The notes under the pieces are model-generated. The model searched no databases. It was not told the origin of the DNA and was given only the letters and a program-made list of their open reading frames with translations. Of a DNA stretch of 64,000 nt, positions 39,501 through 45,500 are shown piece after piece. Location: assembly GCF_902459465.1 (NCBI RefSeq), contig NC_047065.1, positions 868,001-932,000 on the forward strand, written 5' to 3'. Position numbers and translations under genes: made by a program. Source of the stretch: Asterias rubens (Eukaryota). The first letter of the stretch is position 1, and every line of letters starts with the position of its first letter.

Positions 39501-42500
39501 GTATACATCTACATTTACAAAGGATTTAAACAACCGAAATGTTCCAAAAACCAAAATGTATACTTTGTCTTTAAAGGCAATGGACACTATTGGTAATTAC
39601 TCAAAATAATTATCATCATAAAACCTTTCTGGATTACGAGTGATTGGGAGAGGTTGATAGTATAAAACATTGTGAGTAACAGCTCCTTCTGAAGTAAGGT
39701 AATTTTCGAGAAAGGAGTAATTTTCCACGAATTTGATTTCGAGACCTCAAGTTTAGAATTTGAGGTCTCGAAATCAAGCATCAGAAAGCACAAAACCTCG
39801 TGTGACAAGGGTGTTTTTTCTTTCATTATTATCTCGCAACTTCGATGACCGACTGAGCTCAAATTTTCACAGGTTTGTTATTTTATGCATATGTTAAGAT
39901 ACAACAAGTGAGAAGACTGGTTTTTGACAATTACCAATAGTGTCCAGTGTGTTTGACAATAATGGGTAATATCTCTTTCAAGCGTTAAACCATGTTGCTT
40001 TCCCGAAACCCTATAACAGTTAGGTATACATTGCCTTTCAATTTAACAGTTTGAGAATGTTTTCATAAAGTTGTATAGTAAGACAATACAGAGAATGCAA
40101 TTTTTGTTATACTTGGTAGATTCTCGAGGTCCAAAAATACCTTCAAAATATGGAAGTTGAGCGCCCTTTAGAGGACGGAACCAGTGAGACTATCTCCCTT
40201 GCCGATATCTGCTGGGTACCAGTTACCTTACTACCACCTCCTACAACATGCGCGATTACGAGTCCCGTACAATACTGGCAGAGTAGTAATAGGAGTCTAC
40301 ACCAAACAGCTACGTCAGACGATGGCAGACCACAAGACTGGCATGATCATTTCTTATACTGTGTCAGGTAAGAAAGCAAGACCGTGCGCCATGACAAGAC
40401 GCATCACGTCCTCTCCTCCCTCAAAACCACCCTTGCAGGAGTGTTTTAAAGGGGATGATATCATTTTTCATAAAGCTTTCGAAAAGCTGCGACCGAAGTT
40501 GTCTCAGCCAACTTAAAGGGAGCAAATATTGTAAAGCATCTTGCTGAATGACACAAACGTCATGACCGGGACGTGAACCAACATTCCGATTAGTAAACCA
40601 CTAGAGTTTGAACCACTTGCACATGACACCAGATACCAAAAACCTTGTCGATATGACGAGCTCTGTGCCTAACACACCGGCACATTCAGTGGAACACGAT
40701 ACTACACAATAGTTATTGGTTTGTTTATTACATCTTTCCCTAGTCCAACAAATATTTTATCACCCCTCCATGTCGACACAATCTGGAGATACCATCTTGT
40801 TTTCTCCTCCCAATAGGAACCCACTAGCTCTAGCTGATGGGACTAATCTTGCCCTACCTCTCGGGTGTGTATCAGAGTTTCTTGGCCCCAGCTATCCCTT
40901 CATTGTGCTTGGTGGATTTAACGTCACCGATGAAGGTAAGTTTCCTATACGGTCGTCATACAGGACGGTTGGTTTAACGGATTTATTCACAAGACCGACT
41001 TTAAAAGTCTGAATTCACACAAAAACGTCTGACATTTATCATCTCTTAACAATTGAGCATATTCTAAGACTTCTATCATTCATACCTACATTGTGATCAT
41101 GGATTATTTTTTAATTACCAAATTGAATCGTCTGGATAACTCGTAATATCGAAAAACACAGAGAGCAACCCTTGATCGAGACGAGTCCGGTTGGGCAGTC
41201 AGGTTGGCTCAGTGGCTTCTCTCCACACCTTTCACCTCTGTGTAACCCCGGATCGATACCCGGACCGGAGCCTTACATGATTGGGTTTTAGTCTCTTCTG
41301 GCTGCATGGGTGTTCCCTATATATAGGGGTTTTCCCTCCCAAGCCTAAGACTGAAATTCCTTCATTGACTTCTCTACAAAAACTTGGTGTGATGTTTCCA
41401 TTAGTATGATTTGCCGACTAAATAACTCAGATGCAGAGAACCCTAGAAAACATTTCCTCTCCTTTACAGATGTTACATTTACATCGGGGAAAAATATTCA
41501 TTTTGGTATTACCCAAATACACCGATTTGTGTTAGCACTGTTTGCTCATCACTTTCTGGCCCAGAGTTCTGTGGAAAAATATCACAGGCATATGTATACT
41601 ACTTGGTGGGATTCGAACCCACGAACTTTGCAGTTGTATAGAGCAGTATCTATACCAACTAGACTCTTATTTCCTCTTGTTGATGCTAAACAGGTGAGCC
41701 GTTGTACCACACTGCCGAAGCAGTCATGGTCACCTTTGCCGTTAATAATTACCGTGATGATGAAGAGGATCTTCAATTCAAGAGATCTCTAGCCTGGGAA
41801 TCAGCTGCCATCGAATACATCGAGAAATACTTGGAAGAAAATGATGACTTGGTTATCAGATATATGATGGAGGTGGGTCTTGAGAAAAGTTGGGTTCTTT
41901 TACTCAAGAAGAAATATGCTTTTTCCAGAAGACGATCAGAGCATACTGATCGAAACGTCGAGTTGAAACCAACAGTTCTTTTCAGAACCACCCCAACTCA
42001 TTAGAGATAGTCATTTCATGGTGTTACCGCAAACCTTTCCATAAAGAAATATACTCTTGAACGCATTCTCCTGAATACGATCAGAACATACTGATCGAAG
42101 TGAATAGTTGTCAACCACCTGTTCTTTTCAGAACCAACACTACTCAAAAGAGATTTACACTTGGTGCTTACCGCAAACCTAACCTTATTATACTCTTTTA
42201 CCTCCAGGAATTTCCTTTATTTTATCCAAAAAACAAAAAAGGATTGACTTATTATAAGTGGATCAACACAACTAACTTCATATTCAATGCTAATGACGTT
42301 GCTTTTCTCTTGACATTGGTTAAAGTTGTTAAAAAAAATTGATATCAACAAAAACCTCAACATTACAGATTACATTTCTGAGTCACAGATGACAAAGTAA
42401 AAGGTTGACAATTATCTCGTTTTTCCGTCTTGATTCCAAGTGGGTCATAATTGTTATATTGGGAACCGGAATGGTTGCACTTGACTCAAACTTTAAAGAT

Positions 42501-45500
42501 GTCTTATTTATTTATTTATATGTTGTCTAGCGTTCCATTGAAGATGCCTTGATTGAGAGCAGCGAGGCAGATATACTGACTATCATCATCAGCTACTTGG
42601 TCATCTTTGCTTACATCGCGGTGGCTTTAGGAGAATTCAGCAGTCTTAAACGCATCCTGGTAAGATCAGTGCACATCAAGCAGCACATTTAGTGCACGCT
42701 CAGTTTTAAATATTGGAGGAAAGCTCCACAATGGGAAAAAAACACGCGATCAGGTTGGGACTCCGCGTCTGGGGTGGGATTCGAACCAGGGTCCACATAG
42801 GTGAAAGGCAGGGAAAGAAACCACTCAGCCAATCTGACCACAAATTTTTAAGTGATTAGTCATGATTTACCGATTTCACAGCACAGTACAAAAATTCACA
42901 ATATCTTGATTAAAATATATATTTCACAAGGCGTTTAGACAAAATTGCATTATTGTTAACAGTTATGATTGAGTACTGAATACAATCCTTACACACATCA
43001 GTGTGAGGGTAAAACCAAATAAGGTTATTATTTGCAACAGTTGGTAGGGTAAGACACTGCTCTAGAATTACAAAGGTCGTGGGTTCGAATCCCACTCGAG
43101 TAATACACCTGTGATTTTTTCCACGGAGCTAGGGAAAGTACTGAGTACAGTGCTAACACACAGGCGGTGTAAGGGTAAAACCAAATAAGGTTATTATTTG
43201 CAACAGTTGGTAGGGTAAGACACTGCTCTAGAATTACAAAGGTCGTGGGTTCAAATCCCACCATAGTCATACGCCGGTGATTTTGTCCACAGAGCTAGGG
43301 AAAGTTCTGAGTACAGTGCTAACACACAGGCGGTGTAAGGGGAAAACCAAAATTAATATTCTTTATCCAGGATGCAAATTTCTAATCTATTATGTTTTTT
43401 ATTACGGTTATGATTATTAAGATTATTATTATGATCATGATTAATATTATGATTATGATTATAATTATTATTATTTCTAGATTGACTCTAAAGTGACTCT
43501 TGGTTTAGGAGGTATCGTAGTGATTCTACTCTCAGTCACTATGTCTATGGGTATCTATGGATATCTCGGTGTGGCTACAACACTTATCATCATTGAGGTG
43601 GTGCCATTCCTTATGCTTGCTGTGGGTGCTGATAATATCTTTATTTTAGTCTTGGAATATCAGGTAAGGACAGTATGGAAATTACTATCAATTTGTGTTT
43701 TTTTTTATAAAATAAGGCAGTTTTATCAAACTACATGTAGCACTTTGCTAGGATTGAAACGTCAGGTTACAGAAACCCTAAGATATTGAAAACCTAAGAT
43801 GTGGAAAACATGATATCACATGATTAACTAGCCATCAAGAAAGACTCTGCTAGGGTCGAAACATCAGGTCATTGAAAACCTAAGATGTCAAAAATAAAAA
43901 TGATTTAGCAAGATGTGTAGCCTTTGAGAAAGACTCACCTAGGGTCGAAACGTCAGGCCATTAACTATTCTTTGCATTTATACCATAGGCCCTCTTGGTT
44001 GGTAAGCAGTTTGCAACAGCTAATTTTCTTGTTTACTTTGTAACATCCTAACATTACAACTACTGATTTGTTATAAAATAGAAGGTAGTGTATTTGAAAG
44101 TTCTGGGAGACGTTTTCCCAAAGGAAAAAATGTTCCTAATTAATTTGTTGCTCAAAAAATAGGAACCAAGTACACCATCCTATAACGACAACTGATTCGT
44201 TACAAAATAGAAAGTGTGTGCATTAGAAATTTCTAGGGGACTTTTTACAAAAAAACATTGATTTGTCGCTCTAAAAAGAGGAACCAAATACACCATCACA
44301 AAGTATCATCATTGCAGTCTCTCCTGAAACGTCCAGACCACACCGGCTCTTTTCAGGGCCAACACTCCAACAAAGAGATTTAAACACGAATGTACCCAAA
44401 AGTTTACTCTTATTTATGATTTCTTCTTATTTATCCACACCTCAAAGCTTCCAACAATACTTAATATTGCAGTTGATTACATTTGTGAACAGTTTTATAA
44501 CATGAAAGTTTGGTTTGATTTGCAGCGTGATGTGAGACAGCCCGGAGAGTCAAGAGAGCAACAGATTGGCCGAGTCTTGGGCAAGGTGGCTCCAGGAATG
44601 CTTATGTGTGGGCTGTCAGAATCCATTTCTTTCTTTCTAGGTTTGAAATTTTTAAACTACTTCAGTACCATGCCCTGAACTTTGCTAAAGAAGGGGTACA
44701 GCCATTTTCAGGCACAGTCCGGCACCCTTCTGAAGACGATCAGAGCGTCTTTATTGAAATATTGAGGTGTTCAAAACTGGTTCTGGTAGACCCCACACAA
44801 CTCAAAAGAGATTTAAAGATGTGGCTATCATAAACCTTACTTAACAAGAACAGGCAATGGGACATTGGACTCATTTTTCATAGTAATGGGCTGGCCTTAA
44901 GTCTTACTTCTTTTTCCTCTATCCTTGCTTGCAGGAGCTTTAACTGACGTACCAGCCGTGCAGACGTTTGCTCTGTGTGCTGGCCTGGCTGTCCTGATTG
45001 ACTTCCTTCTTCAAATAACTGCCTTTGTAGCTCTCCTCTCTCTGGATCTAGCAAGACAAGAAGTAAGAAAAGAAAAATTTAGACCAAATTAAGAATTCAC
45101 TCCGCGATAGTGAAGTTATCACGATCCACTGAAAGCTAAAGTAGTAGTCCCAGCCAATGTCCTGTCTTGTTCTTCCAAGGCAGAAGTTATTAAGCAAGGC
45201 AGTTCTTTTCAGAACTAAGTAATCTCCAGAATTCCGAATCTACTCTATGACAGTAGAAGTAAGACCAAGTTCCCAAAGAACAAAATCTACACAGCAAAAT
45301 AGATAAAATGTGTTACCAAAAACCAAATATAAATTGTTGTTTCAGTAAAAGTTTATAGATAAATATGCAATAAATTTGCACAGAATTTATTTAAAGTTTA
45401 ATCATTTCTGAATGTTCTTCTTAAAGAGTGGCCGAGTTGATGTAGTCTGCTGTACTCCTCCATGTCCATGCGGAAAGGGAAATATTGTTCGTCATCCTGG

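What the first reader, a model, noticed from the sequence alone, without database searches (positions are those of the whole stretch)
43745..43960. Second hammerhead family: three tandem units, the last with an intact core using the rare U3-A8 compensatory pair
Seen: GAAAC(G/A)TCAGG recurs at 43756, 43858 and 43947 (spacing 102 and 89 nt). Unit 3 folds as stem I GCCT/AGGC, core UUGAGAA plus an extra A, stem II GACTC/GGGTC, GAAA, ACGU helix III and a GUC site at 43952-43954. Established: the C3-G8 tertiary pair can be replaced by U3-A8 with retained activity, so the double change indicates selection for catalysis rather than decay. The motif is sense to the host pre-mRNA (intron 7, within the sterol-sensing-domain exons). 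Inference: a potentially active intronic self-cleaving RNA or mini-retrozyme, unrelated in stem sequence to the X/Y family, that could cut the nascent transcript or release ~90-100-nt RNAs.
Basis: partly seen in the sequence, partly recalled or inferred. Interest (0 to 1): 0.8.

Follow-up and report, generated by a model that had tools for sequence, protein, structure and literature searches.

The report
Penelope retrotransposon hammerhead relic in intron
The third repeat is a real hammerhead-ribozyme motif of the rare U3-A8 type. It is the broken-off tail end of a Penelope-like retrotransposon that landed in a starfish NPC1-like intron, a known kind of element, and this copy very probably cannot cut.

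Summary
**Observation.** The 11-mer recurs at 43756, 43858 and 43947. Unit 3 folds as described.

**What it is.**
- Unit 3 with its downstream flank (43918-44025) is a 5'-truncated copy of a Penelope-like element (PLE). The genome is Asterias.
- Full-length copies encode an 899-aa protein with reverse transcriptase (RT) and GIY-YIG endonuclease domains.
- The motif lies about 320 nt after the stop codon and 22 nt before the element's 3' end. At least 1,200 genomic copies exist.

**Evidence that it is a hammerhead.**
- Related PLEs from other taxa carry a canonical CUGANGA minimal hammerhead at the same position.
- Ten lineages aligned without gaps. 99% of pair cells are paired, and 5 of 13 pairs change on both sides.
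- The 3-8 tertiary pair is U-A in 5 rows, C-G in 4 and A-U in 1, with at least 3 independent switches on the RT tree.

**Limits.**
- The type is already published: PLE min-HHRs, the extra base between 9 and 10.1, and the U3-A8 variant (Cervera & de la Peña 2014).
- Such motifs have no helix III hairpin and need a partner copy to cleave.
- Unit 1 lacks the 5' core. Unit 2 carries G5A. The spacers are unique in the genome, so there is no retrozyme family.
- The youngest autonomous subfamily carries U4C.
- No RNA reads were available to test cleavage.

**Verdict.** A new member of a known kind; this locus is a relic.

The parts
43737..43767 (+). Unit 1: decayed remnant. It keeps the helix II 3' half, GAAACGUC and AGG, but lacks the 5' core (the CUGANGA equivalent) and the helix II 5' strand.
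   Evidence: alignment A1 shows the deletion against units 2 and 3
43829..43873 (+). Unit 2: 45-nt fragment of the same PLE 3' motif. The core reads UCAAGAA (U4C, G5A, a CpG-decay form of the UCGAGAA subfamily state). Helix III reads ACAU. It is cut short 8 nt after the cleavage-equivalent site.
   Evidence: only 43829-43873 matches elsewhere in the genome; 91% identity to L091 and L083
43768..43828 (+). Spacer 1. It is locus-specific, resembles spacer 2, and contains a 16-nt micro-repeat. It is not part of any genomic repeat family.
43874..43917 (+). Spacer 2. It is locus-specific sequence with no other genomic copy.
43918..43975 (+). Unit 3: the 58-nt 3'-terminal block of the PLE, with a min-HHR of U3-A8 type. 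Stem I 43920-23/43955-58; core 43924-30; extra A 43931; helix II 43932-37/43941-46; G12-A14 43947-49; palindrome ACGU 43950-53; C17 43954. The block runs to the element's first 3' end (...TTTGC).
   Evidence: (91-95% identity to more than 30 copies)
43976..44025 (+). Optional PLE 'tail'. This extension beyond the first 3' end is present in only a fraction of copies.
   Evidence: 43918-44025 is 89% identical to the tail-bearing copy in L083; the tail concept is from PMC11167929
43502..43665 (+). Host exon (sterol-sensing domain of an NPC1-like gene) just upstream. It sets the sense orientation and the intronic position of the motif.
   Evidence: GT donor at 43666

Best explanation
**Identity.** Window 43918-44025 is a dead, severely 5'-truncated insertion of a Penelope-like retrotransposon. 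It consists of the last 58 nt of the element plus the optional tail. It lies in sense orientation in an intron of an NPC1-like gene of a starfish (Asterias).

**The motif.** The 58-nt block is the element's minimal type-I hammerhead (min-HHR):
- a 4-bp stem I;
- core U3-U4-G5-A6-G7-A8-A9;
- an unpaired A before G10.1;
- a 6-bp helix II in the family consensus;
- GAAA;
- no helix III hairpin, only the palindrome ACGU, which can form helix III solely by pairing with a second copy.

**Role in the parent element.** This step is inferred from the literature. The motif sits in the 3' flank just upstream of the sites where the element's RT starts copying. It is thought to process element RNA as a dimer or with help from the element protein. 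U3-A8 is a selected Watson-Crick replacement of the C3-G8 tertiary pair.

**At this locus.** The motif is a relic. Units 1 and 2 are older, decayed partial copies joined by locus-specific spacers, and neither has a core that could partner unit 3.
For: **The family is a PLE.**
- Unit 3 matches a dispersed family (534 candidates). Pattern counts are 676, 541 and 226, against controls of 0 to 5.
- Copies show variable 5' truncation and a fixed 3' end. They show 8-13-bp target-site duplications (L002, L006, L009, L026) and an optional ~62-nt tail. Head-to-head inverted pairs occur.
- Full-length copy L091 has an 899-aa ORF with RVT_1 (E 8e-8) and GIY-YIG (E 1.7e-4). The motif lies ~320 nt after the stop.

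**The motif is a hammerhead homologue.**
- Related PLEs (64-71% aa identity) carry the motif at the same place in their flanking repeats. Four lineages have the canonical CUGANGA core.
- Alignment A2 (10 lineages, no gaps) shows G5, A6, A9, the extra A, G10.1-C11.1, G12-A14 and A15.1-U16.1 invariant.
- 99.2% of pair cells are paired, versus 90.8% in shuffles and at most 48.5% when partners are slid.
- Double changes occur in stem I, helix II, the palindrome (CG to GC) and the 3-8 pair.
- The RT tree implies at least 3 independent 3-8 switches.

**Literature.** PMC4209133 describes exactly this architecture, including U3-A8 and monomer inactivity. PMC11167929 describes the tail and internal RT start.
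Against: - No Rfam hammerhead model hits the window, even at E<=10 on 500 nt. This is expected for a motif without a helix III hairpin, but it leaves no independent model-based confirmation.
- There is no biochemical or RNA-end evidence. All available runs are assembled contigs.
- The youngest, 99%-identical autonomous subfamily has C at position 4. That position is invariant in the other nine lineages. Catalysis may therefore be reduced or dispensable in the element now active.
- The cross-lineage sequences are single contigs, mostly from marine metagenomes of unknown host.
Confidence: 0.85

Rival explanations
1. The locus is an active intronic self-cleaving RNA or mini-retrozyme. Unit 3 would cut the nascent NPC1-like pre-mRNA after 43954 or release ~90-100-nt RNAs. 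It would act alone, as a dimer with unit 2, or in trans with other family transcripts.
For: - Unit 3 keeps every position that is invariant across lineages.
- It is sense to the gene.
- The monomer fold forms stems I and II.
- Family copies appear in contigs of a run guessed to be RNA (X7).
Against: - There is no helix III hairpin. Published min-HHR monomers show no cleavage and dimers only low activity.
- Cleavage at unit 3's site in a dimer needs the partner's core. Unit 2 has U4C and G5A, an A opposite A1.1 in stem I, and ACAU, which mismatches ACGU. Unit 1 has no core.
- The spacers are unique, so there is no retrozyme family.
- The window copy also has an A-A mismatch at the sixth helix II pair.
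- PLE HHR-site read ends were not seen even for an active PLE.
Confidence: 0.06
2. The block is mainly a structural signal for the element's RT/endonuclease, for RNA binding or positioning next to the internal RT start. Its hammerhead features are vestigial and cleavage plays no role.
For: - The motif lies 22 nt upstream of the 3' end (RT start).
- The most recently amplified subfamily carries U4C yet spread to hundreds of 99%-identical copies.
- For the anole PLE, HHR mutants did not affect insertion in vitro, and the protein-binding region overlaps the HHR.
Against: - Covariation at the 3-8 tertiary pair and strict invariance of G5, A6, A9, G12-A14 and the NUH site across lineages are specific to the catalytic fold. 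A generic hairpin signal would not need them.
- More canonical, active HHRs occur in fungal PLEs.
Confidence: 0.15
3. Chance resemblance: an ordinary local tandem repeat that happens to look like a hammerhead.
For: - Rfam gives no hammerhead hit.
- The 11-mer with up to 1 mismatch has 7 hits versus about 2 expected, and 1 of 100 shuffles reached 7.
Against: - There are hundreds of genomic copies with zero reversed-pattern controls.
- The motif is linked to an RT/GIY-YIG ORF.
- Canonical-core homologues exist in other taxa, with compensatory changes in all helices.
Confidence: 0.01

Closest known systems
Minimal hammerheads (min-HHRs) in the pseudo-LTRs of metazoan Penelope-like elements, including the U3-A8 variant of Schistosoma mansoni Cercyon (Cervera & de la Peña 2014, PMC4209133)
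   Same: - Type-I motif without a helix III hairpin, with palindromic 15.2-16.2.
- Short stem I (4 bp) and long helix II (6 bp).
- An unpaired base between A9 and G10.1, and a conserved G10.1-C11.1 pair.
- Located in the flank of an RT + GIY-YIG element.
- Most copies are solitary truncated fragments, and some are inverted pairs.
- U3-A8 replaces C3-G8.
   Different: - The host is an echinoderm PLE clade, which that paper's text does not mention.
- Within this clade the 3-8 pair has switched repeatedly and includes an A3-U8 form.
- The youngest Asterias subfamily has U4C.
- Activity was not tested here.
Poseidon PLE of Anolis carolinensis (PAc) (Frangieh et al. 2024, PMC11167929)
   Same: - The HHR lies shortly upstream of the internal RT start sites.
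- There are two alternative 3' ends, which give an optional tail in genomic copies.
- The 3-8 pair is shown to matter: C3G/G8C partly rescues cleavage.
   Different: - In PAc the HHR overlaps the ORF start and the RT start lies about 90 nt after the cut. Here the motif is about 320 nt after the stop and 22 nt before the first 3' end.
- The PAc core is canonical C3-G8.
Non-LTR (animal) retrozymes: tandem HHR repeats giving circular RNAs, proposed as non-autonomous derivatives of PLE pLTRs (bioRxiv 10.64898/2026.07.22.740005; abstract only read)
   Same: A type-I hammerhead of PLE origin, with three motif copies about 90-100 nt apart on one strand.
   Different: - No genome-wide tandem family exists, because the spacers are unique.
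- Only one of the three units has a core.
- That preprint reports retrozymes as depleted from introns in vertebrates.
Rfam Hammerhead_1 (RF00163) and the other Rfam hammerhead families
   Same: The same catalytic core layout and type-I topology.
   Different: No match at gathering score or at E<=10. There is no helix III hairpin, the core is U3/A8, and an extra base is inserted.

Membership tests
PLE min-HHR (Cervera & de la Peña 2014) | Lies in the flanking repeat or 3' flank of an element encoding RT plus GIY-YIG endonuclease | tested here: met
   The L091 ORF of 899 aa has RVT_1 and GIY-YIG. The motif is ~320 nt after the stop. Homologues carry it on both sides of the ORF.
PLE min-HHR (Cervera & de la Peña 2014) | Conserved hammerhead core boxes (C/U3-U4-G5-A6-N7-G/A8-A9 ... 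G12-A13-A14) and an NUH cleavage triplet | tested here: met
   Unit 3 reads UUGAGAA...GAAA...GUC. G5, A6, A9, G12-A14 and U16.1 are invariant in A2. Caveat: the young Asterias subfamily has C4, and units 1 and 2 fail this feature.
PLE min-HHR (Cervera & de la Peña 2014) | [quoted passage not shown] | tested here: met
   An A at 43931, invariant in all 10 lineages (column 22 of A2).
PLE min-HHR (Cervera & de la Peña 2014) | Conserved G10.1-C11.1 pair | tested here: met
   Columns 23-37 are G-C in 10 of 10 rows.
PLE min-HHR (Cervera & de la Peña 2014) | No helix III hairpin; positions 15.2-16.2 are palindromic so that two copies can form helix III | tested here: met
   ACGU in unit 3. Across lineages the pair is CG in 6 rows, GC in 3 and UG in 1, so the palindrome is kept through double change.
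PLE min-HHR (Cervera & de la Peña 2014) | Helices I and II supported by covariation among family members | tested here: met
   99.2% of cells are paired. Double changes occur in stem I (1 pair) and helix II (2 pairs). 0 of 500 shuffles reach the covariation score.
PLE min-HHR (Cervera & de la Peña 2014) | Site-specific self-cleavage (as dimer or with cofactors) | not testable with these tools
   Only assembled contigs were available. No biochemistry was possible.
Rfam hammerhead families (RF00163, RF00008, RF02275-7) | Score at or above the family's gathering threshold | tested here: not met
   No hammerhead hit in the window at gathering score or at E<=10.
Non-LTR retrozyme | A genomic family of head-to-tail repeats, each unit carrying an intact hammerhead | tested here: not met
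   The spacers have no other genomic copy. Tandem Repeats Finder finds no ~90-100-nt array. Units 1 and 2 lack a functional core.

The most novel reading that the evidence does not exclude
The family's hammerhead is catalytically active in vivo as a dimer or with the element's protein, including the U3-C4...A8 core of the currently active subfamily. Sense intronic relics such as unit 3 would then be cut in trans by pairing through the ACGU palindrome with abundant family transcripts. Hundreds of dispersed PLE tails would become conditional cleavage sites in host pre-mRNAs.
Probability: 0.06. Interest if true: 0.6.

Novelty: new member of a known kind. Interest (0 to 1): 0.3.

Why it matters
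For the host gene it probably does not matter. The copy is a relic in an intron.

For ribozyme and transposon biology the locus led to a clean natural data set:
- An echinoderm PLE clade has swapped the hammerhead 3-8 tertiary pair at least three times between C-G, U-A and A-U without ever breaking it.
- Stem I, helix II and the dimer-forming palindrome all covary. This is independent evolutionary support that PLE min-HHRs are selected as hammerheads.
- The most recently amplified Asterias subfamily carries U4C at an otherwise invariant core position. This gives a natural test of whether cleavage is needed for PLE mobility.

The results also show that Rfam-based scans miss this whole class. 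About 875 canonical and more than 1,200 variant copies in this genome gave no Rfam hit in the window.

Tried and rejected
- **Rfam scans** of the window at gathering score and at E<=10, including a 500-nt sub-scan, gave no hammerhead hit. I treat this as a limit of the models for hairpin-less motifs, not as evidence against the motif.
- **Tandem-family or retrozyme reading.** A genome search with 43766-43925 found matches only to the 45-nt motif part of unit 2. Rejected.
- **Within-genome 3/8 covariation.** Of the first 100 matches, 88 read the family's U3-A8 core. Seven were C3-A8 and none was C3-G8, so there is no covariation inside the family. One singleton, CUGAGGA-A-GACUGU..., looked like a canonical sister but has no family, so I did not use it. 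Covariation came only from other lineages.
- **Is U4 in unit 3 merely CpG decay of the UCGAGAA master?** I considered this (roughly CG 68%, TG 17%, CA 10% of 100 sampled copies; TG ~476 versus CA 226 overall). It cannot be excluded for this individual copy. Nine other lineages all have U4, so UUGA is the ancestral state and C4 is derived.
- **5'UTR of the full-length element.** I first thought the element's 5' end coincided with a hammerhead cleavage site. More copies showed the element extends more than 300 nt further upstream. That spot is instead a relic of the other hammerhead family's flanks with the ribozyme itself missing.
- **RNA evidence.** All runs found were assembled contigs, two of them evidently DNA. 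No molecule ends could be read.
The junction between tail and 5'UTR could not be followed.
- **Four homologue look-ups** gave nothing. One returned no DNA (P0013). One flank showed no motif (L104). Another flank had no loop-motif hit (L109). The L102 3' flank is too short to hold the motif.
Full report
**1. The observation**

The 11-mer GAAACRTCAGG occurs without mismatch at 43756, 43858 and 43947 on the + strand.
- stem I is GCCU (43920-23) with AGGC (43955-58);
- the core is UUGAGAA (43924-30), followed by an extra A (43931);
- helix II is GACUC/GGGUC;
- GAAA is followed by the palindrome ACGU, and the GUC triplet is at 43952-54.

The minimum-free-energy fold of the 47-nt monomer forms exactly stems I and II. 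The motif is sense to the host gene. The exon at 43502-43663 hits the sterol-sensing domain (PF12349, E 2.7e-15), and a GT donor follows.

The three units are not equivalent:
- Unit 1 (43737-43767) has lost the whole 5' core.
- Unit 2 (43829-43873) reads UCAAGAA, that is U4C and G5A, with ACAU instead of ACGU.
- Tandem Repeats Finder sees no ~90-100-nt array.

Rfam gives no hammerhead hit at gathering score or at E<=10, even on 500 nt.

**2. Unit 3 belongs to a large dispersed family**

A search of the window's own genome (418 Mb) with 43885-43975 returned 534 candidates. The scored ones are 91-95% identical over 43918-43975. Pattern counts, each set against a reversed-pattern control:

| Pattern | Matches | Control |
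|---|---|---|
| 34-position pattern | 676 | 0 |
| CCTNTGAGNAAGACTC | 541 | 5 |
| CCTTCAAGAAAGACTC | 226 | 1 |

The copies have the marks of retrotransposition:
- They share a common 3' end (...TTTTTTGC).
- An optional ~62-nt extension follows that end in a fraction of copies.
- The 5' ends vary.
- Target-site duplications of 8-13 bp flank copies such as L002, L006, L009 and L026.
- Head-to-head inverted pairs are frequent.

The window copy spans 43918-44025, which is the 58-nt terminal block plus the tail. It is 89% identical to a tail-bearing copy.

**3. The parent element**

I walked upstream from long copies to a full-length copy, L091.
[quoted passage not shown] These two domains together are the hallmark of Penelope-like elements (PLEs).
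- The motif lies ~320 nt after the stop codon and 22 nt before the 3' end.
- Copies of this subfamily are ~99% identical to each other.
- The protein is 99% identical to an Asterias amurensis entry, so the genome is an Asterias starfish.

The two alternative 3' ends match the published PLE "tail" signature. That signature arises from internal initiation of reverse transcription at two adjacent sites downstream of the hammerhead (PMC11167929).

**4. Is it really a hammerhead?**

The genome also holds ~875 canonical minimal hammerheads of the form CUGANGA-N-helix II-CGAAACGUC, against 16 for the control. Their helix II is unrelated to that of unit 3.

The decisive evidence comes from related PLEs. 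I found them through the ORF (64-71% aa identity). They come from the sea cucumber Apostichopus japonicus, the urchin Diadema antillarum and marine metagenome contigs. Each carries a motif of identical length and layout at the same position in its flanking repeats. Their cores differ:

| Core | Lineages |
|---|---|
| CUGAUGA, CUGAAGA, CUGACGA (canonical) | 4 |
| UUGAGAA, UUGAUAA | 3, plus Asterias |
| AUGAUUA | 1, present in both flanking repeats of that element |

Ten sequences align without gaps (A2). G5, A6, A9, the extra A, G10.1-C11.1, G12-A14 and A15.1-U16.1 are invariant.

I counted the hammerhead pairs on A2:
- 99.2% of pair cells are paired. The shuffled mean is 90.8%, and no slid control exceeds 48.5%.
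- 5 of 13 pairs show changes on both sides.
  - One stem I pair switches between C-G and U-A.
  - One helix II pair switches between U-A and C-G, and another among C-G, U-G and U-A.
  - The palindrome switches between CG and GC.
  - The 3-8 tertiary pair is U-A in 5 rows, C-G in 4 and A-U in 1, and is never unpaired.

The RT tree places Asterias (U-A) as sister to a C-G lineage with 100/99 support. The A-U lineage is sister to two C-G lineages. At least three independent switches are therefore needed.

**5. What is already known**

Cervera & de la Peña 2014 (PMC4209133) described this class of motif, which they named min-HHRs. Their description covers:
- location in PLE flanking repeats;
- no helix III hairpin and palindromic 15.2-16.2;
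- short helix I and long helix II;
- a conserved unpaired base between 9 and 10.1;
- a conserved G10.1-C11.1 pair;
- mostly solitary truncated copies, some in opposite orientation;
- a U3-A8 covariant core in Schistosoma Cercyon, with ~1,300 hits.

They found no cleavage by single motifs and only low cleavage by dimers or helix-III-extended forms. Frangieh et al. 2024 found that the anole PLE hammerhead needs the element protein to cleave. It is not required for insertion in vitro, and it leaves no read ends at the cut site in public RNA-seq.

The finding is therefore a new member of a known kind. That paper's text does not mention echinoderms. In the searchable library it is the only paper containing both 'hammerhead ribozyme' and 'U3-A8'.

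**6. Can this locus cut?**

This section is inference from the dimer model of Forster et al. as summarised, applied to the sequence.

Without a helix III hairpin, the active site that cleaves one copy uses the core of the partner copy.
- Unit 2 is the only nearby partner. It has G5A and U4C, an A opposite A1.1 in stem I, and ACAU, which mismatches ACGU.
- Unit 1 has no core.
- Unit 3 itself has an A-A mismatch at the sixth helix II pair. This is the only unpaired cell in A2.

I put cis cleavage of the nascent transcript at about 5%. Trans pairing with other family transcripts cannot be excluded. The spacers between the units are unique in the genome, so there is no retrozyme-like family. The runs available were assembled contigs only, so RNA ends could not be examined.

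**7. A wrinkle worth recording: U4C in the active subfamily**

The young autonomous subfamily reads UCGAGAA, with C at position 4, in 38 of the 41 listed copies.

In 100 copies sampled without regard to this site, the dinucleotide was CG in 68, TG in 17 and CA in 10. Genome-wide, TG outnumbers CA by ~476 to 226.

All nine other lineages have U4. UUGA is therefore ancestral, and unit 3 shows that ancestral core, although CpG decay from UCGA cannot be excluded for this individual copy. C4 arose in the lineage that is now the most active.

From general knowledge of hammerhead mutagenesis (Ruffner et al. 1990; not checked here), U4 changes strongly reduce cleavage in minimal constructs. Either C4 is tolerated in this context, or cleavage is dispensable for mobility. 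The second reading agrees with the in vitro result.

**8. Verdict**

Unit 3 is a genuine U3-A8 PLE min-HHR with strong comparative support. The reading as a tandem array or an active intronic ribozyme is not supported. This is a known type in a new host clade, and interest is modest.

Noticed in passing
window 41926-41962 and 42071-42105: The other hammerhead family in this window (X and Y) belongs to a genome family of about 875 canonical CUGANGA-N-helix II-CGAAACGUC min-HHRs. Both window copies are decayed. X reads CAGAAGA (U4 to A). Y reads CUGAAUA (G8 to U) and has GAAGU in place of GAAAC.
   Followed up: partly
window 44316-44430: A third hammerhead-family remnant lies in the same intron, in sense orientation. 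It is a copy of the CUGAAGACGAGCAG family whose ribozyme is internally deleted (CTCCTGA|AACGTC). The family's GGCTCTTTTCAGGGCC stem-loop follows. That stem-loop explains the sub-threshold Rfam Histone3 hits at 41969, 42115 and 44340.
   Followed up: partly
L091:4400-4520; L093-L096: The 5'UTR of the full-length Asterias PLE contains the flanks and stem-loop of an X/Y-type hammerhead unit, but the ~34-nt ribozyme itself is missing (TTTCTCC|AATTGAAACC). This element therefore carries only the U3-(U/C)4-A8 motif at its 3' end.
   Followed up: partly
L100:697-757 and L100:4323-4383 (marine metagenome contig): A related PLE has an A3-U8 core (AUGAUUA) in both flanking repeats, together with a compensated stem I (GCUU/AAGC). 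I did not look for a prior report of a natural A3-U8 hammerhead core.
   Followed up: partly
L002, L006, L009, L016, L012: In both the U3-A8 family and the canonical family, many TSD-flanked copies begin exactly at the 5' edge of stem I. In the U3-A8 family these are 58-nt solo copies. Inverted head-to-head junctions also fall at this edge. This suggests a preferred RNA 5' end or RT stop at the ribozyme's edge. It remains unexplained.
   Followed up: no
L005:1380-1440 vs L083: An internally deleted derivative joins the first ~40 nt of the full-length element directly to the last ~190 nt of its 3'UTR plus the motif. It may be a non-autonomous short form of the PLE.
   Followed up: no
G000:C1:20532243-20532276 and 20532673-20532706: Two copies of the X/Y-type family lie 430 nt apart and carry UUGAUAA in place of CUGAAGA. 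This is an independent U3-A8 occurrence in a second hammerhead family of the same genome.
   Followed up: no
window 43001-43351: A 166-nt tandem duplication (2.1 copies, 93% identical) contains a tRNA-like T-arm (GGTTCAAATCCCAC). It is probably a tRNA-derived SINE and accounts for the tmRNA and tRNA fragment hits.
   Followed up: no
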